From the NCBI RefSeq assembly GCF_006345805.1, contig NW_021836801.1, forward strand, positions 1 through 37,075: 37,075 nt of DNA, read 5' to 3'. Position numbers and translations under genes: made by a program. The notes under the pieces are model-generated. The model saw only the letters and a list, made by a program, of their open reading frames with translations, was not told where the DNA came from and did not search any database. This DNA comes from Octopus sinensis. Taxonomy: Eukaryota. This document shows, in pieces, positions 2,272-37,075 of the stretch (position 1 is the first letter of the stretch; each line of letters opens with the position of its first letter).

Positions 2272-2668
2272 GAAAATGAAAGGTGTCAAAAAAGAATTTT
2301 TACAAGACTACCTAAACAAATTTATGTGGCGTGACAACGTAATTGGTGATCCTTTTGAAAAGTTAATGGAGCTTTTGAAAAATTATTATGTTGTTCAATA
2401 AACTTGTTCTAAAGTATAGTATTTATTTATAAATTTGATTTTAGTTTTACATTATTTTAATGTTTTCGTCGAATGTTGACATGTATAAATAGGGGCGTTT
2501 GTTTAGGTGCGTTGTTTAATATGTGTAAATTTAGGGGTTTGTTTAATATGTGTAATTTGGGGGCGTTTGTTTAATATGTGTAAATTTAGGGGCGTTTGTT
2601 TAATATGTGTAATTTTGGGGGCGTTTGTTTAATATGTGTGAAGTTAGGGGCGTTTGTTTAATATGTGT
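2272..2668 (+). repeat. Direct copy of the element's own 3' end (matches 3495-3914)
   Basis: Starts GAAAATGAAAGGTGTC at both 2272 and 3495; differences are almost all homopolymer lengths. Confidence 0.95.
2492..2668 (+). repeat. Subterminal tandem repeat, ~28-bp unit GGGGCGTTTGTTTAATATGTGTAA(A/T)TT..
   Basis: About 6 adjacent units with no unique spacers. Confidence 0.9.
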
Positions 2669-2705
2669 TATTGATGTTATAAAAAATTATATTATAATTT
2701 TTCCC

Positions 2706-3622
2706 ATGTTTATTGTAGGTAGTACATACGAAACAACTTTAAGAGAACTTCTAGGAAGTGATACAATCGGGATAATATCATTTTTTAAGGCAAAAGGACT
2801 AATGAAATCAAAATGATGTGTGTTTACTGCAGAAAAGAAATGGTTTGGGTTTTCAAGCGTACCTTATCTGACCAATATACTTGGAAATGTCAGAATTCAA
2901 ACTGTTCAAAATACAAGACCACATTGTCAATACGAACAGGTTCTGTTTTGGCTACTTCGAGTATAAGTCTCAAAACATGGTTAGATATTTTGTATAGGTG
3001 GAGCAATGAAGAATCAATTGTTATGATTAAAAAATCACTGACTGTATCATCTCCAACAGTTATAGAAATTCTTAAAACCATTAGAAAATGTATTAACAGA
3101 CACTTTGAAAGTAATCCCGTAAAATTGGGTGGAGAAAATGTAGTCTGCCAATTTAATGAAAGTCTCTTTTGTCATAAACAAAAGTACCATCGGGGTAGAC
3201 TTGCTAATTCTCAAGTGTGGGTATTCGGTATTGTTGATACCTCATTTTCACCGGGAAGAGGTTTTATGCGAGTGATTCCAAATCGATCAGCGGCCACTTT
3301 AAAACCAATTATCTGTGAAGTCATTCTGCCAGGATCAATTATCCATAGTGATGAATGGAGGGCCTATTCCATTTGAATGTTTTTGGGTATGACCACGCTA
3401 CCGTAAACCACTCAATTAATTTATTGAACCAACCACCGGTGTTCATACCCAACATGTGGAGTCCTATTGGAATAAAAACACAATTGCGTTGTAAGAAAAT
3501 GAAAGGTGTCAAAAAAGAATTTTACAAGACTACCTAAACAAATTATGTGGCGTGACAACGTAATTGGTGATCCTTTTGAAAAGTTAATGGAGCTTTTGAA
3601 AAATTATTATGTTGTTCAATAA
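2706..3622 (+). CDS. Merlin/ISXO2-like DDE transposase, frameshifted
   Basis: Zn-ribbon CVYC...WKC...C, SIRTGS, VCQFNESLF, KYHRGR, WVFGIVD, IHSDEWRAY, YDHATVNHS, and C-terminal LQDYLNKFMWR (in frame in the copy at 2272-2400). Several +/-1 frameshifts, mostly at homopolymers. Confidence 0.85.
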
Positions 3623-3713
3623 ACTTGTTTCTAAAGTATAGTATTTATTTATAATTTGATTTTTAGTTTTACATTATTTTAATGTTTTCGTCGAATGTTT
3701 GACATGTATAAAT

Positions 3714-3914
3714 AGGGGCGTTTGTTTAGGGGCGTTGTTTATATGTGTAAATTTAGGGGCGTTTGTTTAATATGTGTAATTCTGGGGCGTTTGTTTAATA
3801 TGTGTAAATTGGGGGCGTTTGTTTAATATGTGTAAATTAGGGGGTTTGTTTAATATGTGTAATTCTGGGGGCGTTTGTTTAATATGTGTAAATTTGGGGG
3901 CGTTTGTTTAATAT
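3714..3914 (+). repeat. Subterminal tandem repeat, same ~28-bp unit, ending in the right TIR
   Basis: About 7 adjacent units; the last merges into TTGTTTAATATGATCC. Confidence 0.9.
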
Positions 3915-4951
3915 GATCCAAAAAATTCTCCATTTATCCCACAGGATACATGATTTCGATGTTATTATGAGGTAAATTAATTTTATTAATAAGTCACAAA
4001 AAATCTCGGGTGATATCGCAGGCCTTACATTGACTTTCCAAAATGGAAAAGAGTGTTCCAGTTCCGTGATTGAGACCAGAATAGAACAAACGCCATTGAA
4101 TCAAGGCTCCTCTGATAATGTCGTGGGGAATAACAAAGTAATCTACCTACAATCAGTTTGCAAAAGAGAGGATAAAGTTTCTTATAGTCGATAGCTTTCT
4201 CGCATCGAGGAAAAGAAGACCTGCTTACTTAAAGACACAGAAGGAGGCAAATCGTGATCTGTCGGATTTGTCATCAACGAAAGATCCGGCGTATGTCAAA
4301 GGGACAGCACAAAGCCAATCGCCAGAATAAGGTCAGTAAGCAGTGATCAAGGCTGATAGACCAAGTTAATTCGAACCTAGATTTTTTAGTTTTTATTTTA
4401 AAGTTTTCTGAAATTAAGTTACATAATCAATGATCAAACTTTAACTATATATTTTCTATAAATATTATTTTTTAAATAATTAAAAAGTATAAATATTGAA
4501 TCATTATTTTCATCAGCGTGTTCTATTTTCGACAGTTGATGTGGTTACTTTTAATTACGAAAAAAAAGAATTCGGTTGATTATTATTGTTATTCAACATT
4601 TTTTTAAATAATATTTTGCATTTAATTGAAGATTAAATATTTGGTACATGTAGAATATCTTGATAAAAGTTATTTTACAAGTTAAGTGTCCATTTTTTTA
4701 TAATTTAATTTCAATTGAATGCATCTTTTTAACTGATATTTTCCTTTCTATTATATACATTGATTTTATTGATATTTTATAATTATCGACTTTATTTTCT
4801 TTTGTTTTATTTTTATCAAAATTTGATTCAATTGCTCTAAATTTTACAGTGAAAAATCTTAATTTTAATTTCCGATTAATTTTATATCAACTTCAAACTT
4901 TCTTTAATATGTCAATTCTATTTTAAATTATCCAATTAAAAATCCAGATCT

Positions 4952-9865: not shown

Positions 9866-11088
9866 AAACTACAAGGAATAAAACACAAATTATAAACTAC
9901 AAGGAAGAAAATGACAGTGTTTCGTGTCAGCTTATGGCTGACAGATTCTCACATTTATTCCGCAAGACGATCTCGAAAAAGACGATAAATAAATAATTAA
10001 CTGCTTAATAAAAACTCTATTTTACGGGATTCGAAAATCTATCGAAATTCGTTTAAAGCTGCCCACAAACCAAATTTTCCTACGCGTGAAGAAAAATTGA
10101 TCGAATGGATACAATAGAGTCTAAAGGTATTAATTGAAAACTAATTTATAGGTGGTTTTTGAATAATTCCTTAATATCGTGTAAGGCTGCGCATTTTACC
10201 GAGGAGTTACAACTTAGTAACTTAAAAATTCTAATGGATATTGGCAAAATTCAAAAAGAGACGGTTTTAGAATGCCAAAATTACACGGAGAGATGTGAAC
10301 TGATAGAGAAGTTGACATTAATTCCTTTCGTGAAGAATTCAAAGAAATTTCTAAATTGTATAAGCCTGATCTAAGTTATAATTTAGATGAAATTGCATTA
10401 TACTACAAGCTTATTCCATCGAAAAGCAGAAGAAACCGATTCCAAGGATACAATAATTTTAAAGACCTTGTGTCTATTATGCTTTGCTCAAACATGACCG
10501 GAAGTCATGAATTGAAACCTGTGATGATCGGAAAACCGTAAATGCCTAGATGTTTTAGAAATTTGACTATGGATGTCTTGTTTCATATTATAGCTCGCAG
10601 AAAGCTTGGATGACTAGATCTATTTTTATTGATTGGATTATTAGCTTTGATCTTCAGCTTAAAATTGAAAAGAAGAAAATTTTATTGCTAATAGACCACT
10701 GTCCTGCACATTCTATTCCTCAAAACTTGGATTGTATTTAGATTTTATTTTTTCCTAAAAATTCTACTGGATTACTACAACCAATGGATATTGGAATTAT
10801 AAAAACTTTCAAGACTCATTTCATGAGAAGAAAGCTCCAGTACTTAATTGACTTGGTGGAGACTGAAAATATTTCTTTATACAATTCATACAAAAAATTG
10901 ACATGAAAAGATGCAATTTTGTTTGTTATTATGGGTTGGGGTGACGTATATACTGAAACCATTCAAAATTGTTTTAAGATTTTAAATAAATCTAGCCACC
11001 ATAAATTGAACATTATGACACTGAAATTGAAAGAACTGATATTTTCGATCCTTTAATGAGTGAAGATTTATTAGATATCGAATGCATA

Positions 11089-12687
11089 CAGTGGGTCAAA
11101 TTAGTCTTGGGACACTTGTATATTTTTAATAAAATTTTCTTTTCTTAAACATACCTGTTTTTATCTCATTTTTTTCAAAGGCTAAAAAATTAAGCAAAGT
11201 TTTTTACATAATAAAACATTTAAAATAATCCAAGGAAAATTTTATTTGAAAAATTTTGACATTTTTAAACAAACAGTCACAAAATCAAATGCTAATTAGT
11301 CTTGGGACAAATTACTTAATACTTTGTAAAGTATCCGTTATTCTCCAAAACTGCATTTAAGCGATTTTTATAATTGTTAACAAGCTTTTTACAAGTTTCA
11401 ACAGGAATTTTATTCCATTCTTCAAAACAAAATGATTTCAATTTCGCAATATTTTTTGGATTATGCGCCCATACTTTGGCTTTTAATTCCTTCCAAAGGT
11501 TTTCAATCGGATTAAGATCTGGGGACTGACTTGGCCATTCAAGGGTATCAATCAAATGTTCTTCTAGCCATTTTTGAGTTTTTTTGCGGTGTGCTTTGGA
11601 TCATTGTCTTGTTGAAATGTCCAATTTCCTGCAATACCACATTTCTCAATTGACGAAAATAGATTTTTTTCCAAAATATCACAGTATTTAGAAGCATTCA
11701 ATATTCCGTCAATTACATGAAGTTCTCCAACGCCCCAAGAAGAAAAACACCCCCATAGCATAATACTGCCACCTCCATGTTTAACTGTTGGTATGGTATT
11801 TTTGGACGATATTCATCCTTTGATTTACGCCACACGTAGCTTGTATAATTGTGTCCAAAAATTTCTATCTTTGTTTCATCCGACCAAATAATATTATTTA
11901 GAAAGTCGTCGTCTTTAAGTAAAATTTTTTTGGCATATTTTAGCCGTGCATGGACGTGTTTCTTAGTAAGCAGCGGAACTTTACGTGGACGACATTTATG
12001 GAACCCTTCTTTTCTTAGGGCATTTGTAACAGTCTGTGAGCATACTGGTGTTCCTATCTCACCCAAGTAAGTAGAGAGTTGTTTACGAGATAATCTCGGA
12101 TTATCAAGCACTTTTCGTCTAATTATGGAAATTGATCGAGATGATTTTTTTTTGGTTGTCCTGATCTTGGCTTATTTTTGGTAGTTTTAAATAATTTCCA
12201 TTTATTGATAATGTTCTATACTGTACTCTTCGGAATATGAACACTTTCGGAAATTTTTCGGATTGAGTTTCCTGCATTATATTCAAGAAGTATAAGTTTT
12301 TTTATTTCTTCTGAATGTTCCTTTCGCTTAGGCATGTACAAAATATTAATCGCAAATAATACTAATAATCATTTAAATATACGAATTAATCCAGAATTAG
12401 TATAATTTCGTTGATCGATATGTAGATCAATTCAATTATTTTATCAAAAAGTAAATAAATAACTAACTGTCCCAAGACTAATTGGAACATGATATTCTAT
12501 CTGTTGGAAATAAATGTGAAATTTTTCTATAAATAAAACGAATTTTGTAATTTTTTTATGATCTAGGATGTAAAGAGAACTAGGAGCACTATTATACTAT
12601 TGAAAAAAATTAAATAAAAACAGCTATGTTAACGAAAATAAAATTTTATTAAAAATAAACAAGTGTCCCAAGACTAATTTGACCCAC
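11089..12687 (-). mobile_element. Tc1-family IR/DR-type transposon inserted at a TA in Tigger copy A
   Basis: TA|CAGTGGGTCAAATTAGTCTTGGGACACTTG at left, inverted copy at 12660-12687. Inner 16-bp repeats at 11294-11309 and 12468-12483. Empty site GAATGCATAGATCAAG present in copy B near 33031-33046. Confidence 0.95.
11316..12335 (-). pseudogene. Tc1 DD34E transposase with one nonsense codon and frameshifts
   Basis: MPKRKE start at 12335; RSGQPKK, PRKVPLL, WSDETKIEIFG, KHGGGSIMLWGCF, FQQDNDPKH, WPSQSPDLNPIENLW; in-frame TAG at STV*NIINKW. Confidence 0.95.
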
Positions 12688-13325
12688 CAAGATATAAACA
12701 AAAATTGTTTAAAAGAAGATCAAGAGTTTGAAAGTAGCGACGAAGAGACAAAAATCATATATCCACTCAATAGAAAGAATATTGCAAGAAGATTAACTGA
12801 AATAGAAAGGGAACTTTACTGTAATGCAGAAAATAAGAATGATGTTTCGCTCATTTAAGAAATTACAAAGCAAAGTTAAAAAGAGCCAATAAAAAGGAAT
12901 TAGGGATTGAATTTTTTTAATAAAATTTAAACGTGTTTATTATATTTGTAGGTATTGATTTTTTTTCAAATTGGCCATAAAATTTGTATGTACCAAAAAT
13001 GGCCAATTTGCGAGGGTTCACTGTATACATTTTTCTGTTAAATTCTGCTAAATTAATCATTTTTTCTGTTAAATAACTACCTCAGTAAATGAAACGTTCA
13101 ATTTCAAAGATATACAGATTTGACGTATTGATTAATAGCTATGAATATTGTCAAAAGTAAAAAACTTGTTTCCAGTACTGAGGCTTTACTTTTCAAACTC
13201 AGTGGTTTATTTGTGTTTCATTCAAAATAGCAAATGGATTGTATAAAAAATGACAATAAGAAAGTTTATTTAGAAAATTTTTTATTTGGCTTGGGTCAAA
13301 AACAAAAATTAATAATATTAGTTTA

Positions 13326-13866
13326 TTAACATTGAAGGATAAATTCATACATATAGTTCGTTCTGTCATGGAACCCTGTTATAAATAATCATAATAAACA
13401 CTTTTTCTCATTTTACCACTGTAAACAAAACCCATTCTGGTGATTATTGGGATCAAGCCGCTCGTGCAGTCCAACACGATTTGCTGAACTTTTTCCTTTG
13501 TAAATTTGCGAATTAAACTTCTCAACAACACCTCATACATCCCCTCATTAATTTAATCATCAAAATAAACAAATCTTTTTGACAAAGAATGGTGATATTT
13601 CACTTGCTTAATGACCGCCCTTGTATCAGAAAATAACCAGCAAGACATGTGCTAACAATCATTTTAAAATTATAACCGCCTGAAGCTCTTCGTAGTGGTA
13701 ATAACCCAATGTCACTCGGTCAGATATTGACTCCTCATCACTCTCATCACATCCAATATCCCCAACCAGCCATTCATAGTTTTTTAGAGTTGGGGAATCT
13801 ACTGCTTGATTAGAACTCATTTGTACTGTTCTTTATTTCCCGGACTTTCAAATTTTCTTCAATCAT
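13326..13866 (-). CDS. GNAT-fold acetyltransferase-like protein, 145 aa, copy A, 5 exons
   Basis: Exons 13866-13827, 13801-13677, 13651-13571, 13543-13402, 13375-13326 joined by GT-AG introns of 25, 25, 27, 26 nt give an open 438-nt ORF. C-terminal half HSLSKRFGMYEVLLRSLIRKFTKEKVQQIVLDCTSGLIPIITRMGF resembles GNAT motifs A/B. Gene model is firmer than the family call. Confidence 0.7.
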
Positions 13867-14141
13867 TTAGTTTTTTAATTGCGGAAATATTCTTTAAGTG
13901 GGCTGTGGCTCGTGCGAATTGATTAGACATTTCAACTAATTGGTGTTCTCAAATAATTTAATTGATTGGTTCAGTTTTAATACTTCTGCCTAAAAAATCG
14001 ATCTTTAAAAAATCTTTAAGAAGCGTACTCTTCTCCTTAGTCGGTTCGGCTTACAATTCAAGGAGGTTAATCTAACACAAATATTTTTTTGATAAACTAC
14101 TTCCGTCTATTTATAAAATAACAATTGTGTCAAAATCGCTA

Positions 14142-15290
14142 CAGTCCGACTCCGAATTGAGGCAGACCCCAGGGGTGGAGCACCCTCGGATTTTGGGGCA
14201 CTATAAAATTGTGGGGAACGAAATTATAAGTAAATAAAATTATATTTTATTAATAAATACATAATTTAAATTTACACGTTTATTTACATTTTTTTGTTGT
14301 CAATGGTTATAAACTACGAAACAAAATTAAAGATTGCTAAATTGATATCGAAGAACAAATTATGTGAAAGACAGATAATTCAAAAATAAAAAACTAGTAA
14401 AGGAATGATTTCACGAATAAAAAACAATTGTGCCTTTTCTTGAACAAGGAACTGTAAACACGGATGAATATCCTATGCCTTATTGTGAGAAATCGAAATT
14501 TGATGATCAAGTTTTTGAAATATTTCAGAAACTACGGGAAGATAAAATTCCAATATCAGGTCCTTTCATAAAGAAAATCGCCTTATATACGGCTTCTAAG
14601 ATTGGATTTGATTCTTTCAAAGCTTCAAACGGCTGGCTTGACAGATTCAAAAAGCGTCATGAACTGAGATTCAAATCAATTTGTGGAGAGAAAAATTCTT
14701 ATTGAGTTTTTATTTTTGCCAAAAAATACAACACCGTATTTGCAGCCAATAATCAAGACCTTCAAAGATCATTACTCAAATTATCTGATTTGTGCTTTGA
14801 GGATGATGGTGATGAATTCAAACGGTCGATAAACAAAATAAACCTTCGTCAGGTAATTCTGCTAATTTCTAAACCTGGGAAAAACTTGATCCAAGTTTAA
14901 TATTTAATTGTTGGGATCAAATTGAAGATTCGTGATTCCGTAAGAATTGAAGATAGAATTACAGAAGAATTAATCAACAATGCCGTAAACGGAACATTGA
15001 ATGGTGAAAATGACGAATTCGTCAATAATTTTTATAACGAAGGTTTAGAAAACGATAAAATGGAAACAAGTCTACGAGAAACGCAAGATTTGTTTGATCA
15101 GTAAGAGAAGAAAATTTTTCACATATCTCGTGAAATGCTCAAAGAATTTTACGATTTTCGACTTAATTTTATGAAAAATGTAACAAGTAAAAGGAAAACT
15201 GGGGATAAATTAACTGATTATTTTTCTAAAATTGATTGTTGATGTTTAATTGAGCCTACAATTTTAAAAATTGACCTAAAAATATTATTT
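14142..15290 (+). mobile_element. Tigger/pogo element family 2, copy A, internally deleted
   Basis: TA|CAGTCCGAC 5' end; CENP-B HTH (IPISGPFIKK..FKASNGWLDRFKKRH..CGE) joined directly to the C-terminal FLPKNTTPYLQP. Right TIR not found, so the end coordinate is approximate. Confidence 0.85.
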
Positions 15291-15308
15291 ACAACTTAAT
15301 TTCATATA

Positions 15309-16120
15309 CAGTCAACCCACTCTATACTGAACAACTTTACATAATTACAAGCTTCATAGAGTGTCGGGACATGAATTTTTTCATCTTCCTCTAGTTCTTC
15401 AACTTCGTCTTGCTGTTTTAGTTTTCTCAAAAAGTTTTTTATACAGTTTTCCTTCGTCAATTTGATCATTTTCATGAATCAAAAATTTTTATCATCTATT
15501 TCTTCTATTTCTATCACTTTCTGTATTACACATTTTCTAATGGATTTTTGAAACAATTTGTAATTGTCAATTCCGATACTTATAACCAAGCTTGATTTAT
15601 GAATATCAAGCAATCAAAATTTTTTCAACTTTTGCGTATTTTTTTTGATCTGCATTCCCATCATTAGTATAGAATTCAATCTTGTGTGCAGTTGTCACAC
15701 TTGTCTGTGCATGATTTTATTATTCTTTGTTGTAACTTCGATGTTGTATTTGAGGCAAAAATGTACAGTAGCATTATCAAGTAAAATTCTAATTGTTGTT
15801 TTTTTAAATCATTTTTTGTTCAATTTTATGAGCCATTTTAAGAAATAATCATAACAGCTAGTGTTCTACTTAACAAAAGTTAAAAAAATCCAGTTTCGTT
15901 TTAATTTAAAATAATTTTTGAACAATATTGTTCTAATTTTCTACTGAGGTTTACAGTAAAGTCTTCAATCAAAGAGATAGAGACTTGAATCAATAGTACT
16001 CTCGGCAGTTGTGGACAGTTATAGAAAGAGGATCTCCTATTTTCCCTTGACCACATTCTCAAAGTGAAATCTTCGTTATGCAAAATCCTTCCGAAAAAAA
16101 TCAAGTGCGGTTAGTAACTG
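15309..16120 (-). mobile_element. Tigger/pogo element family 3, decayed deletion derivative
   Basis: Bounded by TA|CAGT and ACTG|TA with imperfect TIR similarity; minus-strand remnants ILLDNATVH and INQAW.VSELTITNCFK. Confidence 0.6.
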
Positions 16121-16552: not shown

Positions 16553-17870
16553 TCAAATAGCATATCCCTTGTAACACTTTTGGTGGTAGTCCTAAGAACA
16601 TCCGAAAAAGACAACTACCAATTCACCCACGCGGATGGCATCCTTCAAGACCCAGCCTTCGTCCTCCTCACAGTGCCTCCAACCCCTCATTGCACACACT
16701 ACATCGACTTGTACACCCAATCTGTACGTCCTCACATCCACTAACATCTGCGGCCTGAGGACTACTACTTCTGGTCTCCACACCCCAAATCCAGTCCTAC
16801 CAACAATCACCACACCACTACAGCATGCTTCCTGTATAGGTCTCGACATGTGGTCACAGCACTCCTCTTCTCCACCTGTTGGTTAGCTCGAAAGTGTCTG
16901 TCCAGGTGTCTCTTGTACAACTCTGCCTGCCCGTCCCTGAAGCGAAATGCACATGACCCACAGGCCACACCGTCGTAGAGAGTCCTCACGAATGCATCGG
17001 GGGGTCTAGGACAATACAAAGTGGGAGTACCTCGATAGACTCTCCAGAGTGAGATCGACCGGACTGTCCCCCTATCACACATATCAAACAACAACAGATT
17101 TATTCATCAAAATACAAGTCATCAACACTCTAGAATACCTTTCTCTCATTTCCTGTCTGCTGCCTCTACACTTCATTGCAAAGACAAACCGGAATGTGTC
17201 GCTTAGTAGATGCCCCTTCATTGTCAGTCTACAATATGGAGAATAGATCAACTAGAGTGGTGGGTTGTGTGTACTTTCCGGACTTGAATTGGTAGGTGAA
17301 GGCAGGGATCTCAGCCAGAAGTTTGATTTGTGGGACGGGGCCTCGAATAGATAGAGAAGCGAGGAGACCAGACAAGGCAATGGAGTGAGGGAGTCCAAAC
17401 AAGTGGACAACTCTGGGAGGGTCCCCAAATCCAATTTCATAGAACATGTGGCCAATGATCAACTCGTGACAAGGCCCACCAAAGGAGACAGTCCTGGTGA
17501 CCCCATCAATGTCGAGTTGACTGGGCTTGGTCAAGTCGAAAGTGTAGGTGGTGTGGTCGATGGTGGTGAGATCACGGATTCCGGGGAGAAGGAGACCGCT
17601 CTGGCCTGATGGGCGACATAGACGAAGGGAATGAGCTCATCGAAGACAACAGTGTGATGTCGGCCGTCGATGATGACCATTTTGGGAGGTGGGCGGAATC
17701 TGAGTGTGTGTCCATCAGGAAGGGTGACAGGGCAACCACCGTACTGGGCGACGACCTGTCCGTCCATGATGACATTGTTGGTGGGACTGTCCACTCGGAT
17801 CTCCCATCTGCCACACTGCATGGGAGGTGCGTCTGCTCTGGCCTCCACAGGGAGGAGTTTTAGAAAATAA
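16553..17870 (-). CDS. PCF11: PCF11-like pre-mRNA cleavage factor, C-terminal half (two apparent frameshifts; 5' part not found)
   Basis: Spliced reading gives DLTLESLSRPPDAFVRTLYDGVACGSCAFRF..YKRHLDRHFRAN, DWI, CSVCNEGLEAL(W)EEDEGWVLKDAIRVGELDYHQKCY: the two PCF11/Clp1-interacting zinc fingers. Introns 17252-17229 (24), 17189-17166 (24), 17138-17072 (67), 17030-17006 (25), 16821-16797 (25), 16618-16592 (27). Frame breaks at 17583-17586 and near 16670. Confidence 0.85.
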
Positions 17871-19440
17871 CTAAACAAAAAAAGGAATAATTGAAGAAGT
17901 AATAACTATTAGCAAACAACCATTATATAATAGAATTTTACTATAAATAAAAAATATATGAATCTCACGGGAATAATTTGTATGAATATATTTTCTAATA
18001 TCATGTTATTAAAGTATAATGAACATAGTAAACAAATGCTGTTGTATTTTTCGGAAAACTTCACCTACGGGGAAAAGAAAATTTTTATTAATAAAAAGCC
18101 TAGATTACAGCTGGGTCTCGGGTACATTATATTATTTCCTGGTCCACAACTGTTACGAGCGAACTTTTTATTCGTTCATGAAGAATAACTTGCATGGGTA
18201 TATTTTTTAATTTTATGAATTAAAGTATAATGAAAATATAAAATTGTATCTTTACTCTGAGGCTACATCTAAAACGAAAAACTCCCATGCACGAGAAAGA
18301 AACAATAATAAAATATGAATAATCAGTGATGTAGAAATATTTGCATTTCTTGATGTAATTTCAATATAAAAGAAATATTTGAAAAGTATAAAGAAACACA
18401 TATGAGGTTTACTGCCTGGCTTTCTACGCGTCGAGAAGAAATTCTCGTAAAAAACAAGCCTACATTATAACTGGGCTACATAGTTTTATGAACTAATTTG
18501 ACGCAGCATCAATGCATTTTCAATATGATAAACACAATTATTTTGATTTCCATATTTTATCATAATTGAAGTATACATTGGTGTAGGGGTGCCCACTTGG
18601 ATCAGGACCTACACAACAGAGATTCCCAACTGGAATTATTCCGCCGCTGTGTAGGAGCCCTGACCAAACTTGGAGTGGATATGGATATGCAGCAAGAGCT
18701 CCTGCTAGAAGGGAGCAATTCAGCAACATAGCCACTATTAACTCTGGCTCACGACAGATAAATTGGACGCAAGCTCAGAAGAGTTCAGTTGCCTTGGCAT
18801 CAGTCTCGTCCTATCACCGTCCTTAATTCCTGTCACTTTCTCTTTCTCGGTTAATTACAATAAACTTGTTCGTTTGTTAGCTTGGCAAAATGGGTATTTC
18901 TCAATTATAAATTTTTTATTGACAAAATCAATTTTTTTTCTAAGCACACAAGTGTAACGCGTCTGGACGGGTCGCACGTCTGGACTGTGACATTTTATAT
19001 TGTAGAGATCTTAATAATATTCTGGGAGTGGGGACTCATATTTACTAAATCAGCACTGGATACGCGTACATTTCTTATAAGATTTACAAGAGGGATTTTT
19101 TGGTCTAAATTTCATCATAAAATGTGTATGTGTTTTTATTCTTTTTCTTTTCTAGGATCTTGGGGTTGTTGTAGTACAGCCTTAAGACGCGGCTGAACTT
19201 TTCACGCTCATCTTAGGGTTGCCCTTTAACTCTCTACATTCTAGCAAGTTCAGTTTGGTTCGACATCCAAATCCATGTTATATAAGGACATTTTTGAGCA
19301 AATTTCAGAAAGAAATAATATAAACAAGTTTTCATTTCAAAGTAGTTAATAATTTACAGAACGACAAATACGTACTTATATTGTTTGCAAGACGTAAATT
19401 ACAATAATTTTTTTAAACAAATTAGGTCAAGAGAAAAATC

Positions 19441-22379: not shown

Positions 22380-23474
22380 TCATAAACGACCCCCCTTCCC
22401 GAGGACAGTGTCGTAGGCAATGCCTATAAAAACGACCGCAGTTGAAATCCATTGATGAACCATCATTTCGTTCCCGAATACAATCACCGACAGAACAATC
22501 GTAAAAAATTTTCTAGTTGTAGTAAATATAGAACACACAAGTGGTCCTAAATGTGCAATAGTTCCGAATATAAAAAGCTAAAGTACATTCAAACCGAGCA
22601 AACCTGACCAATCGAACTCGTCCCCGCAGCACAAATTATATTCCCCAACAATTTTGGGTGAATTCTTACAAATTTCAAAAAACGCGTGAATTCGCCCGTG
22701 AATGAAATGACTGAAATACATTTATTTTATGTACCCGAAAAAAGAATAAGACACGACCACAAATTCATGTTGAACATTAAAATAAGTGGATCAAGTTTGT
22801 AAAAAGACTTTATCCTGTCTTGGATTCCACCTGTGAAGCCATCAAACAACAAAGAAATAATCTAAGTCTCAAAAACAGAAAAAACCAGGAGAAAAATGGG
22901 GAATAACCCATTCGACTGTTTTGACTCAAAATTAGAATAATTGGGTTTGTAGAAGAACACGGTGATTCCCAGTACTATTACTGCCACAGCAATATATTTA
23001 TGGATTGAGTATCTCTTCCGCCCAATCAGAACGCCAAGGAATAAAACAGAAATTGGCTTAACAGACTTTGCCAGAACTTGTGTTGGGTAACTGACATATT
23101 TTAGTGCATAATTACTAGCAAGCATTGCCACCACATACGTTACTCCACATGATATAAAATAATAAAAAGGAATATTATTTTCCTGACATATTTTGCCGTT
23201 CATAATATAATTTGCTAAAATACTCAATGGATTTCATTTACCGATTATGGCTGCCACGAGTGAGGCCAAACATAAGCAAAACACCAAAGTGAGAGTATAT
23301 TCGAATCTTGTCTTTAGGTTGTCCGAACTAATATAAACTGATTTTGTTCTACAAAATAATAAAAAAACATTTTAACATTTTTTCTTGAAAAAATCCATAG
23401 ATTAAATAACTTGAAAATATTCCCATAAAATAAAACAGGGATGAAATAATATTACTTTTTTTCACAACACCCAT
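22380..23474 (-). CDS. SLC35B1: SLC35B1-like nucleotide-sugar / ER ATP-ADP transporter (UAA family), 321 aa, intact
   Basis: Exons 23474-23377, 23348-23242, 23214-22886, 22861-22735, 22710-22604, 22577-22380 (introns 28, 27, 24, 24, 26 nt) give an open 966-nt ORF. Motifs YGFFQEKIT, SNYALKYVSYPTQVLAKSVKP, DGFTGGIQD, MNLWS, TGE, GQLFIF, GPLVCSIFTTTRKFFT, QW. Confidence 0.95.
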
Positions 23475-31788: not shown

Positions 31789-33375
31789 TTGACTAAACTA
31801 AGAAAAAAATTAATTTTCTTAGTAAATTGGCCAATTCTCAAATTGAAACACAATTGGCTGAATTTTCTTGATAAAACACAAATTATAAACTACAAGGAAG
31901 AAAATGACAGTGTTTCGTGTCAGCTTATGGCTGACAGATTCTCACATTTATTCCGCAAGACGATCTCGAAAAAGACGATAAATAATTTACTGCTTAATAA
32001 AAACTCTATTTTACGGGATTCGAAAATCTATCAAAATTCGTTTAAAGCTGCCCACAAACCAAAATTTCCTACGCGTGAAGAAAAATTGATCGAATGGATA
32101 CAATAGAGTCTAAAGGTATTAATTGAAAACTAATTTATAGGTGGTTTTTTGAATAATTCCTTAATATCGTGTAAGGCTGCGCATTTTACCGAGGAGTTAC
32201 AACTTAGTAACTTAAAAATTCTAATGGATATTTGGCAAAATTCAAAAAGAGACGGTTTTAGAATGCCAAAATTACACGGAGAGATGTGAACTGATAGAGA
32301 AGTTGACATTAATTCCTTTCGTGAAGAATTCAAAGAAATTTCTAAATTGTATAAGCCTGATCTAAGTTATAATTTAGATGAAATTGCATTATACTACAAG
32401 CTTATTCCATCGAAAAGCAGAAACCGATTCCAAGGATACAAAAATTTTAAAGACCTTGTGTCTATTATGCTTTGCTCAAACATGACCGGAAGTCATGAAT
32501 TGAAACCTGTGATGATCGGAAAACCGAAAATGCCTAGATGTTTTAGAAATTTTGACTATGGATGTCTTGTTTCATATTATAGCTCGCAGAAAGCTTGGAT
32601 GACTGGATCTATTTTTATTGATTGGATTATTAGCTTTGATCTTCAGCTTAAAATTGAAAAGAAGCACATTCTATTCCTCAAAACTTGGATTGTATTTAGA
32701 TTTTATTTTTTCCTAAAAATTCTACTGGATTACTACAACCAATGGATATTGGAATATAAAAACTTTCAAGACTCATTTCACGAGAAGAAAGCTCCAGTAC
32801 TTAATTGACTTGGTGGAGGCTGAAAATATTTCTTTATACAATTCATACAAAAAATTGACATGAAAAGATGCAATTTTGTTTGTTATTATGGGTTGGGGTG
32901 ACGTATATACTGAAACCATTCAAAATTGTTTTAAGATTTTAAATAAATTTAATAAATTAAACATTATGACACTGAAATTGAAAGAACTGATATTTTCGAT
33001 CTTTTAATGAGTGAAGATTTTTTAGAAATCGAATGCATAGATCAAGATATAAACAAAAATTGTTTAAAAGAAGATCAAGAGTTTGAAAGTAGCGACGAAG
33101 AGACAAAAATCATATATCCACTCAATAGAAAGGATATTGCAAGAAGATTAACTGAAATAAAAAGGGAACTTTACTGTAATGCAGAAAATGAGAATGATGT
33201 TTCGCTCATTTAAGAAATTACAAAGCAAAGTTAAAAAGAGTCAATAAAAAGGAATTAGGGATTGAATTTTTTAATAAAATTTAAACGTGTTTATTATATT
33301 TGTAGGTATTGATTTTGTTTCAAATTGGCCATAAAATTGTATGTACCAAAAATGGCCAATTGCGAGGGTTCACTG
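31789..33375 (+). mobile_element. Tigger/pogo element family 1, copy B
   Basis: Collinear with 9879-13023 but lacks the Tc1 and has a 31-bp deletion removing ILLLIDHCP; 3' TIR ends at 33375, followed by TA. 5' TIR not found. Confidence 0.9.
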
Positions 33376-33482
33376 TATACATTTTTCTGTTAAATTCTGC
33401 TAAATTAATCATTTTTTCTGTTAAATAACTACCTCAGTAAATGAAACGTTCAATTTCAAAGATATACAGATTTGACGTATTG

Positions 33483-34001
33483 ACCACAAAGAAAACACAG
33501 AAGATATTGGGTGTAACGTTTGACACTTTCCTCTGTTTCTCACCTCATGTTGAATCGATCGTGTCAACTTGTATAAAGAAAATCAATTTTGTGAAAGCCT
33601 TTCTTTCGAACTGTGGGAGAACTTGTCCGCCAGGGGTAGAGACCCTTTACAAGCAGTATATCGAGCCAACAATAGGCTATGCATGTGCTGCTTGGGGCTG
33701 TAACCTGGCGGCAACGAACCAACTAAAAATCGAGAAAATCCAAGAAAAATCCATAAACATACTGAAGGACCATACCGACATGAAAATTGTCCATCGAACA
33801 CTGGAGTCTCTTGTAGAGGCAAGTGGGAGGGATCGTGGAGATGGACCACAAGCATTTCACCGTACATACAGAAAGTGTGTGGGGTCACGGTCTGAACATC
33901 GTGAAAAGATGGCTAGACTGTTGAGAAGTGTCGGAATCACCTGAACACGTTAGTTAATGGTTAAGACGGTGATTCTGTTTTTGGCTTAAATAATAATAAT
34001 A
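33483..34001 (+). mobile_element. 5'-truncated LINE 3' end with (TAA)n tail, present only in copy B
   Basis: KILGVTFD..L.FSPHV, LYKQYIEPTIGYACAAWG, KIEKIQ; tail TAATAATAATA near 33991-34001. Empty site GTATTG|ATTAATAGC at 13125-13139 in copy A. Confidence 0.88.
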
Positions 34002-34195
34002 ATTAATAGCTATGAATATTGTCAAAAGTAAAAAACTTGTTCCCAGTACTGAGGCTTTACTTTTCAAACTCAGTGGTTTATTTGTGTTTCATTCAAAATA
34101 GCAAATGGATTGTATAAAAAATGACAATAAGAAAGTTTATTTAGAAATTTTTTATTTGGCTTGGGTCGAAAACAAAAATTAATAATATTAGTTTA

Positions 34196-34736
34196 TTAAC
34201 ATTGAAGGATAAATTCATACATATAGTTCGTTCTGTCATGGAACCCTGTTATAAATAATCATAATAAACACTTTTTCTCATTTTACCACTGTAAACAAAA
34301 CCCATTCTGGTGATTATTGGGATCAAGCCGCTCGTGCAGTCCAACACGATTTGCTGAACTTTTTCCTTTGTAAATTTGCGAATTAAACTTCTCAACAACA
34401 CCTCATACATCCCCTCATTAATTTAATCATCAAAATAAACAAATCTTTTTGACAAAGAATGGTGGCATTTCACTTGCTTAATGACCGCCCTTGTATCAGA
34501 AAATAACCAGCAAGACATGTGCTAACAATCATTTTAAAATTATAACCGCCTGAAGCTCTTCGTAGTGGTAATAACCCAATGTCACTCGGTCAGATATTGA
34601 CTCCTCATCACTCTCATCACATCCAATATCCCCAACCAGCCATTCATAGTTTTTTAGAGTTGGGGAATCTACTGCTTGATTAGAACTCATTTGTACTGTT
34701 CTTTATTTCCCGGACTTTCAAATTTTCTTCAATCAT
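34196..34736 (-). CDS. GNAT-fold acetyltransferase-like protein, 145 aa, copy B
   Basis: Exactly copy A + 20870 with no indels; the only difference is AT>GC (13595-13596 vs 34465-34466), changing Tyr to Cys in VK[Y/C]HH. All splice sites retained. Confidence 0.7.
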
Positions 34737-35009
34737 TTAGTTTTTTAATTGCGGAAATATTCTTTAAGTGGGCTGTGGCTCGTGCGAATTGATTAGACAT
34801 TTTAACTAATTGGTGTTCTCAAATACTTTAATTGATCGGTTCAGTTTTAATAGTTCTGCCTAAAAAATCGAGCTTTTAAAAAATCGTTAAGAGGCGTACT
34901 CTTTTCCTTAGTCCGTTCGGCTTACAATTCAAGAAGGTTAATCTAACACAAATATTTCTTCGATAAACTACCTCCCTCTATTTATAAAACAATTGTGTCA
35001 AAATCGCTA

Positions 35010-36961
35010 CAGTCCGACCCCGAATTGGGGCAAACCACAGGGGTGGAGCACCCTCGGATTTTGGGGCACTTTTTTGGCCAACATTTTGGCAGAGTAAAAT
35101 GAAAACTTGATAAAAAGTACGGAAATTTTGGGGCACTATAAAATTGTAGGGAATGAAATTATAAGTAAATAAAATTATATTTTATTAATAAATACATAAT
35201 TTAAATTTACACGTTTATTTAAATTTTTTTGTTGAAAATGGTTATAAACTACGAAACAAAATAAAGATTGCTAAATTGATATTGAAGAACAAATTATCTG
35301 AAAGACAGATAATTCAAAAATACAAAACTAGTAAAAGCATGATTTCACGAATAAAAAACAATTGTGCCTTTTCTTGAACAAGGAACTGTAAACACGGATG
35401 AAGATCCTATGCCTTATTGTGAGAAATCGAAATTTGATGATCAAGTTTTTGAAATATTTCAGAAACTACGGGAAGATAAAATTCCAATATCAGGTCCTTT
35501 CATAAAGAAAATCGCCTTATATACGGCTTCAAAGATTGGATTTGATTCTTTCAAAGCTTCAAACGGCTGGCTTGACAGATTCAAAAATCGTCATGAACTG
35601 AGATTCAAATCAATTGTGGAGAGAAAAATTCTTATTGAGTTTTTATTTTTGCCAAAAAATACAACACCGTATTTGCAGCCAATAATCAAGACCAGGGGTT
35701 CTCAACCTTTTTAGCTCAAGGGCCAAATCGATAATTAAGATTAGCTTCGCGGGCCGCACAAAAAATATTTTAATATATTTTTATATTTTCCAAGCCGGTA
35801 ACTCGCTTGCAATCCGAAGTGCAGCCACTGCTGATGCGTAATAAGTTTTAGACTCTTTTTTTCTTTTTTTAATTTCCATTTTTTTATAAAGAAATAAAAG
35901 CTAAAAAAATCTACAAAAGACGTTGTATCTAAAAAGAAAATACTATTTGTTTATTAAGTTTTTGAAATCGGAATAAGTAAAGTCGAAGAAGTTCGTAAAA
36001 GCTGACTCAAGTGATTATCCGTGAGCTTGTTACGATATTTATTTTTTATTCGAATCATTTTACTAAATATTGATTCACATAAATATGTAGATTTAAACAT
36101 TGATATATTCATATATGCATTGTATGTTATATTTTTGAATTTGTCTTGAGGAATTAATTCGTAAAAATTAATAATAGACGCATTTTTGAACAATGCCGCC
36201 AGTAAATTAATGAGTTCTAGTTGAATTTTGCAGGCGCATCCTTAATTTCCACGCTGAATAAAGTTGCGAATATTTTCATTAAAGGAAGGAATTCTTTAAA
36301 ATTCTAAAAATTAAATTTATATAAATGTACCCCAAAACGTGCTTCAAATTGATTAATGAAATCACCAATTATGGATATGTTTAACCTTAAGAATGAATAA
36401 TTAAATTTAAACATTATTAAAAAATTAAAAAAGTTAGTTACTCTAGAGGGGCCGCAAAAAAAATCCTGGGGGCCACATGCGGCCCCGGGGGCCGCATTTG
36501 AGAACCGCTGATCAAGACCTTCAAAGATCATTACTCAAATTATCTGATTTGTGCTTTGAGGATGATGGTGATGAATTCAAACGGTCGATAAATAAAATAA
36601 ACCTTCGTCAGGTAATTCTGCTAATTTCTAAACCTGGGAAAAACTTGATCCAAGTTTAATATTTAATTGTTGGGATCAAATTGAAGATTCGTGATTCCGT
36701 AAGAATTGAAGATAGCATTACAGAAGAATTAATCAACAATGCCGTAAACGGAACATTGAATGGTGAAAATGACAAATTCGTCAATAATTTTTATAACGAA
36801 GGTTTAGAAAACTATAAAATGGAAACAATTCTACGAAAAACGCAAGATTCTCTTGATCAGTCAGAGAAGAAAATTTTTCACATATCTCCTGAAATGCTCA
36901 AAGAATTTTACGATTTTCGACTTAATTTTATGAAAAATGTAACAAGTAAAAGGAAAACTGC
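35010..36961 (+). mobile_element. Tigger/pogo element family 2, copy B, interrupted by a hAT derivative
   Basis: TA|CAGTCCGAC at 35010; collinear with 14142-15201; retains ~70 bp between ATTTTGGGGCACT direct repeats that is missing in copy A. Confidence 0.85.
35693..36510 (-). mobile_element. Non-autonomous Buster/SPIN-type hAT element (818 bp)
   Basis: TIRs CAGGGGTTCTCAA and TTGAGAACCGCTG; 8-bp TSD ATCAAGAC (35685-35692, 36511-36518); C-terminal transposase remnant FKSTYLCESIFSKM..KNKYRNKLTDNHL; single ATCAAGAC empty site at 14752-14759. Confidence 0.95.
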
Positions 36962-37075
36962 TGTTTTAGTTTTCTCAAAAAGTTTTTTATACAGTTTTCG
37001 TCAATTTGATCATTTGCGTGAATCAAAAATTTTTATCATCTATTTCTTCTATTTCTATCACTTTCTGTATTACAC

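What the first reader, a model, noticed from the sequence alone, without database searches (positions are those of the whole stretch)
13326..13866. Hidden, duplicated micro-intron gene encoding a divergent GNAT-like protein with an atypical acetyl-CoA loop
Seen: no ORF is called here, yet removing four GT-AG introns of 25, 25, 27, 26 nt gives an open 145-aa ORF (MIEENLKVREIKNID...VIKQVKYHHSLSKRFGMYEVLLRSLIRKFTKEKVQQIVLDCTSGLIPIITRMGFVYSGKMRKRFHDRTNYMYEFILQC), with a second intact copy at 34196-34736. Established: GNAT motif A is R/Q-x-x-G-x-G/A, followed by a helix, a beta strand and a GF motif. Inference: here the loop reads KRFGMY, with Tyr at the last G/A position, so this could be a lineage-specific GNAT with altered cofactor binding, or a pseudo-enzyme. 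I cannot assign a subfamily.
Basis: partly seen in the sequence, partly recalled or inferred. Interest (0 to 1): 0.75.

Follow-up and report, generated by a model that had tools for sequence, protein, structure and literature searches.

The report
Small duplicated micro-intron gene, GNAT unproven
A short gene split by four ~25-base introns is very probably real and sits in two copies of a 5.6-kb duplicated, transposon-littered segment. The claim that it encodes an acetyltransferase-like (GNAT) protein rests only on weak, sub-threshold similarity.

Summary
On the minus strand (13866..13326), removing four GT-AG introns of 25, 25, 27 and 26 nt gives the quoted 145-aa ORF. A second copy at 34736..34196 differs by two adjacent bases (Y74C).

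ORF length alone is not evidence, because about two thirds of shuffled windows yield an equally long spliced ORF somewhere. Three independent facts make a real gene likely (about 0.8):
- A bona fide UAA/SLC35B transporter gene in the same window has six 24-28-nt GT-AG introns (Pfam E=1.7e-50).
- Exons are 16 GC points richer than introns; 0 of 71 chance models reach this.
- The gene is the least diverged part of the 5.6-kb duplication, with 2 differing bases against 13.4 expected (P=1.5e-4).

The GNAT reading is only a hint.
- Pfam, NCBIfam, PADLOC, plasmid tblastn and the word-indexed whole-protein search of the 5.8-billion-cluster protein database find nothing.
- The best PDB hit is a GNAT, but at E=0.2-0.3.
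- One home-made GNAT profile gives 7.8 bits in the correct register; an independent one gives 0. True GNAT paralogues score 11-60 bits.
- The "atypical" Tyr in motif A is weak evidence, because E. coli RimL, PhnO and ElaA also deviate there.
- The tool did not accept the spliced protein for structure prediction.

Verdict: a new small orphan gene, possibly a very divergent GNAT. Modest interest.

The parts
13326..13866 (-). Copy 1 of the gene, from ATG (13866-13864) to stop TAA (13328-13326). Five exons: 13866-13827, 13801-13677, 13651-13571, 13543-13402, 13375-13326 (40, 125, 81, 142, 50 nt).
   Evidence: Splicing and translation reproduced. Exon lengths and GC (38.1%).
13802..13826 (-). Intron 1, 25 nt, GTACAA...GCAG. 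In-phase alternative acceptors give 22 or 28 nt. It also contains an ATG (13820) that could be an alternative start.
13652..13676 (-). Intron 2, 25 nt, GTTATA...TTAG, 16% GC.
13544..13570 (-). Intron 3, 27 nt (a multiple of 3), phase 0, with an in-frame TAA. It sits inside the putative motif A loop, between Phe82 and Gly83.
13376..13401 (-). Intron 4, 26 nt, GTGTTT...ACAG. An alternative donor at 13399 (24 nt) would give a 188-aa protein ending at 13199, but that tail is disrupted by an indel in copy 2.
13322..13327 (-). AATAAA hexamer overlapping the stop codon; a candidate polyadenylation signal.
   Evidence: Read directly from the sequence. Its function is inferred.
13299..13932 (.). 634-nt block with a single difference (the AT>GC dinucleotide) between the two copies. 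It covers the gene plus 27 nt on the 3' side and 66 nt on the 5' side.
   Evidence: Difference map; statistics.
34196..34736 (-). Copy 2 of the gene, with the same exon/intron structure shifted by +20870 (introns 34696-34672, 34546-34522, 34440-34414, 34271-34246). Cys instead of Tyr at residue 74.
9878..15531 (.). Copy 1 of the segmental duplication that carries the gene. It includes a pogo-like transposase remnant, a Tc1/mariner insertion (11091-12687) absent from copy 2, and a Tc5-type HTH remnant (14430-14705).
31871..37075 (.). Copy 2 of the segmental duplication, 95-98% identical to copy 1, running to the end of the window. It has its own insertions: a LINE tail at 33484-34001 and about 820 nt at 35694-36510.

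Best explanation
This is a genuine small protein-coding gene of a eukaryote with ultra-short introns. Its five exons are joined by removing four 25-27-nt GT-AG introns, giving a 145-aa soluble protein. The gene was copied along with about 5.6 kb of transposon-rich DNA, and both copies have been kept almost identical.

The most likely specific fold is a very degenerate GNAT-type domain (inferred, not shown). The proposed layout is:
- Residues ~66-78: strand beta4.
- K80-R81-F82-G83-M84-Y85: the loop whose backbone amides would hold the pyrophosphate of acyl-CoA.
- Residues 86-100: helix alpha3.
- Residues 103-108 (IVLDC): strand beta5, with Asp107 at the position of the RimI general base Glu103.
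- Residues 111-121 (GLIPIITRMGF): a helix alpha4 that is three residues short and lacks the usual catalytic Tyr (Ile116 in its place).

If this is right, the protein binds acyl-CoA and is either a weak or specialised N-acyltransferase or a non-catalytic binder.

Probabilities: real gene about 0.8; GNAT fold given a real gene about 0.35-0.5.
For: Gene is real:
- The same window contains a UAA/SLC35B transporter gene (23474..22380, minus strand). Its 312-aa ORF appears only after removing six GT-AG introns of 24-28 nt, and it matches Pfam UAA over 2-308 of 311 positions at E=1.7e-50. It uses the standard code, with no in-frame TAA or TAG.
- The candidate's introns have the same lengths and boundaries. 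Exons are 38.1% GC and introns 22.3%; the control gene shows 35.6% and 26.9%. No chance model in shuffles reaches that contrast (0 of 71, z about 3.5).
- Between the two copies, the gene has 2 differing bases where 13.4 are expected (P=1.5e-4). No other 541-nt window of the duplication has fewer than 5.
- The duplication is old enough that each copy has acquired its own transposon insertions.
- AATAAA overlaps the stop codon.

GNAT-like:
- The top two hits of an unbiased PDB search are GNAT spermine/spermidine acetyltransferases (2fl4, 9dsb). Query residues 86-128 align to residues 93-135 of a 149-aa enzyme. GNATs detectable with my profile make up only 350 of 177,635 PDB sequences.
- A profile of 9 E. 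coli GNATs scores 7.8 bits (i-E 2.5e-4; 0 of 2000 shuffles reach it), aligning FGMY to the G-x-G of motif A and MGF to the conserved GF. A 15-member profile gives 7.4 bits.
- RimI- and RimL-family profiles give p=0.019 and 0.027.
- A global alignment with the nine GNATs is co-linear end to end.
Against: Against a real gene:
- There are no transcript data.
- ORF length alone is not significant.
- The near-identity of the copies also covers introns and synonymous sites (about 4.5 neutral changes expected, at most 1 seen). Gene conversion rather than selection could therefore explain it.
- The exact start codon and the intron 1 acceptor are ambiguous.

Against GNAT:
- No match in Pfam, NCBIfam or PADLOC at E<=10, and no GNAT match in PHROGs.
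- An independent 6-member GNAT profile gives 0.0 bits, and 272 of 2000 shuffles do as well.
- The 7.8-bit score falls to about 0-1 bits when RimI, RimL or SpeG is left out.
- Every true GNAT paralogue scores 11-60 bits in cross-validation.
- hhalign gives probability 2%.
- The N-terminal half hits nothing.
- No homologue was found among about 15 billion proteins or in the DNA collections.
Confidence: 0.4

Rival explanations
1. The gene is real and constrained, but the protein is a lineage-specific orphan with a fold unrelated to GNAT. The similarity of residues 82-140 to motif A/B is then a chance resemblance of one amphipathic helix, a hydrophobic strand and a 'GF'.
For: All the evidence that the gene is real applies here too. 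All curated profile libraries are silent. An independent GNAT profile gives 0.0 bits and the positive score is fragile. In the PDB search, unrelated proteins score almost as well as the GNATs (E 0.46-0.65 against 0.2-0.3).
Against: The top hit of the unbiased PDB search is a GNAT aligned in the correct register, in a protein of almost the same length. Two profiles place the match on motif A/B with 0 of 2000 shuffles reaching the score.
Confidence: 0.35
2. There is no gene. The ORF is a by-product of permissive 'splicing' of AT-rich DNA, and the low divergence of the block reflects a recent gene-conversion tract or a mutational cold spot.
For: About two thirds of whole-window shuffles contain a spliced ORF of at least 145 aa. 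Conservation extends to introns and synonymous positions, as conversion would predict. There are no homologues anywhere and no transcript evidence.
Against: The exon/intron GC contrast is not reproduced by chance models (0 of 71). All four introns fall in the 24-28-nt range of proven introns in the same window. AATAAA sits at the stop codon.
Confidence: 0.2
3. The ORF is a passenger or accessory gene (or its remnant) of one of the flanking pogo-like DNA transposons, and it was copied by transposition rather than by segmental duplication.
For: The gene lies between two decayed pogo-like elements on the opposite strand: DDE_1 at 32347-32805 and HTH_Tnp_Tc5 at 35364-35711.
Against: No terminal inverted repeats enclose it. 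The duplicated unit extends far beyond any single element and contains several nested, independently decayed elements. The transposase remnants carry frameshifts and stops, while this ORF is intact in both copies.
Confidence: 0.05

Closest known systems
GNAT (GCN5-related N-acetyltransferase) superfamily. Examples: E. coli RimI, and the Enterococcus faecalis spermine/spermidine acetyltransferase (PDB 2fl4).
   Same: Similar size (145 aa against 148-149). A K-R-F-G-M-Y loop is followed by an amphipathic helix, a hydrophobic strand ending in an acidic residue (IVLDC against LWLEV in RimI), and a helix ending in GF. The alignment is in register in phmmer, hmmsearch, hhalign and MAFFT.
   Different: It scores far below every true member (7.8 or 0 bits against 11-60 bits) and matches no curated GNAT model. 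The first motif A position is Lys rather than Gln/Arg, and the last is Tyr rather than Gly/Ala. Helix alpha4 is three residues shorter and lacks the Tyr that acts as general acid in RimI (Ile116 in its place; alignment, catalytic roles from my own knowledge of RimI). The N-terminal half shows no detectable similarity.
Ultra-short-intron genes of dicyemids (Dicyema japonicum) and myxobolid myxozoans
   Same: Introns are 25-27 nt with bare GT...AG boundaries, AT-rich, in a repeat-rich genome that uses the standard code. Overall window GC is about 36%. According to PMC13644364, D. japonicum and the myxobolids are the only animals with median introns under 30 bp. PMC6736024 reports 36.7% GC and 49% repeats for D. 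japonicum. The in-window control gene has six such introns.
   Different: The source organism is not identified here. The gene has no recognisable orthologue, whereas the published examples are conserved genes such as RPS13.
Lineage-specific (orphan) genes in recent segmental duplications
   Same: No relative was found by the searches run here: the whole protein by the word-indexed search of the 5.8-billion-cluster database, exon 4 alone by the exhaustive search, and the PDB. There are two copies in 95-98% identical 5.6-kb segments.
   Different: Here the gene block is far better conserved than its flanks. This argues for constraint or conversion rather than neutral drift of a young duplicate.

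Membership tests
GNAT superfamily (Pfam clan CL0257) | Significant match to a curated GNAT profile (for example Acetyltransf_1/3/7/10, or the NCBIfam GNAT models) | tested here: not met
   Pfam and NCBIfam hmmscan of the 145-aa protein returned 0 families at E<=10. PADLOC returned none, and PHROGs returned only an unknown family at E=0.063.
GNAT superfamily (Pfam clan CL0257) | Motif A loop Q/R-x-x-G-x-G/A between beta4 and alpha3 | tested here: inconclusive
   The aligned loop is K80-R81-F82-G83-M84-Y85. The central Gly is present, the first position is Lys, and the last is Tyr. Real E. coli members also deviate: RimL QGQGII, PhnO RGLNVG, ElaA RGEKVG.
GNAT superfamily (Pfam clan CL0257) | Motif B / helix alpha4 ending in a conserved G-F/Y, after strand beta5 | tested here: inconclusive
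   MGF (119-121) aligns with the only invariant column of the 9-GNAT alignment (G119 of RimI). The helix is 3 residues shorter, and the Tyr of 'A..lY..GF' is Ile116.
GNAT superfamily (Pfam clan CL0257) | Profile score in the range of bona fide, mutually distant members | tested here: not met
   Cross-validated E. coli GNAT paralogues score 11-60 bits. The query scores 7.8 (set A), 0.0 (set B) and 7.4 (combined). The set A score collapses in leave-one-out. hhalign gives probability 2%.
GNAT superfamily (Pfam clan CL0257) | GNAT fold: mixed beta-sheet with a beta4/beta5 splay that holds acyl-CoA | not testable with these tools
Exon 4 alone (47 aa) gave an uninformative single helix with pLDDT 65, so no fold search was run.
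GNAT superfamily (Pfam clan CL0257) | Binding of acyl-CoA and transfer to an amine | not testable with these tools
   This needs a biochemical assay.
Ultra-short-intron nuclear genes of the host genome | GT-AG introns within the host's narrow length range | tested here: met
   Candidate introns are 25, 25, 27 and 26 nt. The proven UAA/SLC35B gene in the window has 28, 27, 27, 24, 24 and 26 nt.
Ultra-short-intron nuclear genes of the host genome | Introns more AT-rich than exons, and disruptive if retained | tested here: met
   Exons are 38.1% GC and introns 22.3%; 0 of 71 chance models reach that difference. Every retained intron leads to a nearby stop in the raw frames, and the 27-nt intron carries an in-frame TAA.
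Ultra-short-intron nuclear genes of the host genome | Transcripts spanning the junctions | not testable with these tools
   No reads were available. Exact look-up of the spliced protein found nothing, but the spliced control gene was also absent, so the look-up is uninformative.

The most novel reading that the evidence does not exclude
This is an orphan gene family peculiar to an ultra-short-intron parasite lineage. It has no detectable relative in any collection searched. It is held nearly invariant in two copies whose flanks have drifted 2-9% and have each acquired separate transposon insertions. It could be either a GNAT that has diverged beyond profile recognition and lost its catalytic Tyr (a CoA-binding pseudo-enzyme), or a recently born gene that already carries four micro-introns.
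Probability: 0.2. Interest if true: 0.5.

Novelty: new member of a known kind. Interest (0 to 1): 0.3.

Why it matters
If real, this shows that small genes split into exons of under 50 codons by ~25-nt introns escape ORF-based and standard eukaryotic gene finders. This matters for the few animal lineages with such introns, where published gene counts are very low (5,012 for Dicyema japonicum; PMC6736024).

A constrained, duplicated orphan would be a candidate lineage-specific function in a highly reduced parasite. If it proves to be a GNAT, it would mark how far that fold can diverge and still be retained. None of this changes current understanding of GNAT enzymes or of micro-introns, so the value is mainly for annotation.

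Tried and rejected
1. The whole-protein search of the 5.8-billion-cluster database returned no hit at E<=10.

I did not route around this. I submitted only exon 4, which is an exact window translation.
- Its exhaustive search returned only Listeria-Bacteroides repeat (Flg_new) proteins, whose scores are summed over repeats. I rejected these as spurious.
- Its structure model was a single low-confidence helix and is uninformative.

3. I used the 43-aa aligned fragment of PDB 2fl4 to fetch that family. It found only two short fragments.

4. A search with the 9-GNAT alignment returned only close RimI, RimL and PhnO relatives, so it did not broaden the profile.

5. tblastn against plasmids found no match.

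6. The search for related loci on viral and prokaryotic genomes found nothing. On metagenomes it returned one contig, L015, matching residues 10-63 at 41% identity.
- The contig was selected through the acidic 8-mer GCDESDEE.
- It is bacterial (Shine-Dalgarno sequence and terminator).
- The rest of its protein does not align.
- I treated it as spurious.

7. Pairwise phmmer against 189 E. coli ORFs showed only mild enrichment of GNATs (ranks 3, 11, 17).

8. I searched for terminal inverted repeats that would place the gene inside a transposon and found none convincing.

9. An upstream ATG (13930) cannot be joined to the ORF by any 20-32-nt intron.

10. Exact look-ups to identify the source genome found nothing.

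11. Rfam and tRNA scans of the window were empty.

Full report
**Observation**

The feature is on the minus strand. Reading 13866 down to 13326, I removed GTACAAATGAGTTCTAATCAAGCAG (13826-13802), GTTATAATTTTAAAATGATTGTTAG (13676-13652), GTTTATTTTGATGATTAAATTAATGAG (13570-13544) and GTGTTTATTATGATTATTTATAACAG (13401-13376).

The copy at 34736..34196 has identical introns and differs only at two adjacent bases, which changes Tyr74 to Cys. Unspliced, the locus has only ORFs of 56 aa or fewer.

**Does this genome really have such introns?**

Yes. Exons of a UAA/SLC35B-type nucleotide-sugar transporter lie on the minus strand between 23474 and 22380. Removing six GT-AG introns of 28, 27, 27, 24, 24 and 26 nt gives a 312-aa ORF. 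This ORF matches Pfam UAA over positions 2-308 of 311 at E=1.7e-50.

That CDS has no in-frame TAA or TAG, and its Gln codons are CAA/CAG, so the standard code applies.

The rest of the window is rich in transposons:
- LINE endonuclease and reverse transcriptase
- Tc1/mariner
- pogo-like DDE_1 and Tc5 HTH
- an IS1595/ISXO2-like transposase

According to PMC13644364, introns under 30 bp occur among animals only in myxobolid myxozoans and in Dicyema japonicum. PMC6736024 gives 36.7% GC and 49% repeats for D. japonicum, similar to this window. I could not identify the organism.

**Is the ORF more than chance?**

I used dynamic programming to find the longest ATG-to-stop ORF obtainable with at most four GT-AG introns of 24-27 nt. 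By length alone the ORF is not significant.
- 4 of 500 dinucleotide shuffles of the local 1.1 kb reach 145 aa.
- 14 of 20 shuffles of the whole window reach it somewhere.

Three further observations are independent of ORF length.
- **Composition.** Candidate exons are 38.1% GC and introns 22.3%, like the control gene (35.6% and 26.9%). In the best chance models from shuffles the difference is -0.004 +/- 0.046, with a maximum of 0.13. None of 71 reaches 0.158.
- **Conservation between the copies.** The gene lies in a duplication, 9878-15531 and 31871-37075 (95-98% identity). The duplication has had time to acquire separate insertions: a Tc1 element with 88-nt inverted repeats in copy 1 only, and a LINE tail plus an ~820-nt insert in copy 2 only. 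Across 3,846 aligned bases there are 84 differences. The gene's 541 bases contain 2 (one dinucleotide event) where 13.4 are expected (Poisson P=1.5e-4, Fisher P=6e-4). No window of that size elsewhere has fewer than 5. The invariant block, 13299-13932, is the gene plus 27 nt downstream and 66 nt upstream.
- **Polyadenylation signal.** AATAAA overlaps the stop codon.

One caveat applies. Introns and synonymous sites are also unchanged (about 4.5 neutral changes expected, at most 1 seen, P about 0.06). Gene conversion may therefore contribute to the conservation. I put the probability of a real gene at about 0.8.

**Gene-model ambiguities**

- Intron 1 has in-phase acceptors that would give 22, 25 or 28 nt.
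- An ATG at 13820, inside intron 1, could be an alternative start.
- A donor two bases downstream in intron 4 (24 nt) would give a 188-aa protein ending at 13199.
- A TAA lies directly upstream of the ATG, in frame.
- A 23-codon upstream ORF (13930-13859) overlaps the ATG and cannot be spliced into the main frame.

**Is it a GNAT?**

Negative results:
- Pfam, NCBIfam and PADLOC report nothing at E<=10. PHROGs reports one unknown family at E=0.063.
- There is no relative in the protein database, in plasmids, or in the viral or prokaryotic collections. The one metagenomic hit is a pattern-selected match to an acidic linker in a bacterial protein.
- The N-terminal 92 residues hit nothing in the PDB.

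Positive hints:
- The two best PDB hits of the whole protein and of its C-terminal 90 residues are GNAT spermine/spermidine acetyltransferases (2fl4, 9dsb), at E=0.2-0.3. Query residues 86-128 align to 93-135 of a 149-aa enzyme. Unrelated proteins follow closely at E=0.46-0.65. GNATs are rare in the PDB: 350 of 177,635 sequences match my profile at E<=1. A GNAT as top chance hit would therefore be unusual.
- I fetched nine E. coli K-12 GNATs (RimI, RimL, MnaT, SpeG, YjaB, PhnO, YpeA, YiaC, ElaA). Their profile scores the query at 7.8 bits (i-E 2.5e-4), above all 2000 shuffles. It aligns F82-G83-M84-Y85 to the G-x-G of motif A and M119-G120-F121 to the conserved GF.

The signal does not replicate.
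- A profile of six other GNATs (RimJ, YhbS, YjgM, YafP, YhhY, RffC) gives 0.0 bits.
- True paralogues score 11-60 bits in both directions.
- Leaving out RimI, RimL or SpeG drops the score to about 0-1 bits.
- hhalign gives probability 2%.
- Family-specific RimI and RimL profiles give p=0.019 and 0.027.

The GNAT reading is therefore a sub-threshold hint confined to residues ~82-140. I put it at 0.35-0.5, given that the gene is real.

The structure test that would decide this could not be run. Exon 4 alone modelled as one low-confidence helix.

**The motif A argument**

The loop does read K-R-F-G-M-Y in the aligned register. In the same alignment, RimL has QGQGII, PhnO RGLNVG and ElaA RGEKVG. 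The pyrophosphate is held by backbone amides (established knowledge of GNATs), so a Tyr at the last position is not in itself a sign of altered cofactor binding.

Two other differences would be more telling if the fold is confirmed. Helix alpha4 is three residues shorter. Ile116 replaces the Tyr that serves as general acid in RimI, while Asp107 aligns with the RimI general base Glu103. The alignment is; the catalytic roles come from my own knowledge.

**Mechanism proposed (inferred)**

I propose a small cytosolic GNAT-like domain that binds acyl-CoA in the beta4-alpha3 / beta5-alpha4 cleft. It would either transfer the acyl group inefficiently, or to a special substrate, using Asp107. Alternatively it would act as a non-catalytic CoA or substrate binder.

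The rivals are:
- a real orphan protein of another fold (0.35)
- no gene at all, with conversion explaining the conservation (0.2)
- a transposon passenger (0.05), since no inverted repeats enclose it

**Verdict**

The hidden-gene inference is well supported indirectly. The duplication is real, but it is segmental rather than of the gene alone. The GNAT assignment and the pseudo-enzyme speculation are not established. This is a probable new small orphan gene in an ultra-short-intron genome, useful for annotation and of modest wider interest.

Noticed in passing
window 23474-22380 (minus strand): An intact UAA/SLC35B-type nucleotide-sugar transporter gene. It reads as 312 aa only after removing six GT-AG introns of 24-28 nt (Pfam UAA E=1.7e-50). 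It served as the in-window control for micro-intron splicing.
   Followed up: yes
window 13933-14169: The stretch immediately upstream of the gene differs between the two copies at 22 positions in 237 nt (about 9%). That is roughly four times the 2% background of the duplication, and it directly abuts the invariant gene block. Unexplained.
   Followed up: no
window 13930-13859 (minus strand): A 23-codon upstream ORF (MSNQFARATAHLKNISAIKKLND) starts at the edge of the conserved block and overlaps the main ATG out of frame. No 20-32-nt intron joins it to the main ORF.
   Followed up: partly
window 11091-12687: A Tc1/mariner element with 88-nt terminal inverted repeats (92% complementary) and an HTH_Tnp_Tc3_2 ORF. 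It is present in copy 1 of the duplication only, so it inserted after the duplication.
   Followed up: partly
window 33484-34001: A 518-nt insertion present only in copy 2, about 200 nt downstream of the gene's stop codon. ORF 33441-33944, which runs across it, resembles the C-terminal tail of a non-LTR reverse transcriptase. That resemblance is my reading only; Pfam gave no match.
   Followed up: partly
window 2319-3944: An IS1595/ISXO2-like (DDE_Tnp_IS1595) transposase ORF at 2813-3376. It is bracketed by two arrays of a 28-29-nt tandem repeat (2502-2668 and 3725-3915, consensus TTTAGGGGCGTTTGTTTAATATGTGTAA) and by 90-nt direct repeats (2319-2408 and 3540-3629, 99% identical).
   Followed up: no
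window 31789-33040 and 35207-35711: Two decayed pogo-like elements on the plus strand flank copy 2 of the gene. The first has a DDE_1 domain with frameshifts and a stop. The second joins a Tc5 HTH almost directly to the 'LFLPKNTTPYLQP' segment, so it is internally deleted.
   Followed up: partly
window 16807-17878 (minus strand): A GC-rich (about 44%) run of three ORFs of 95-115 aa with no Pfam match. One contains a C..C...RF...H.D.HF pattern that reminded me of a PCF11-type zinc finger. This is from memory only and is not verified.
   Followed up: no
L015 792-1259: A bacterial groundwater-metagenome ORF (Shine-Dalgarno sequence, terminator) shares the acidic stretch DLGCDESDEE-GYY and 8 of 20 residues to its left with residues 10-63 of the candidate. 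The contig was selected through that 8-mer, so this is probably coincidence.
   Followed up: partly
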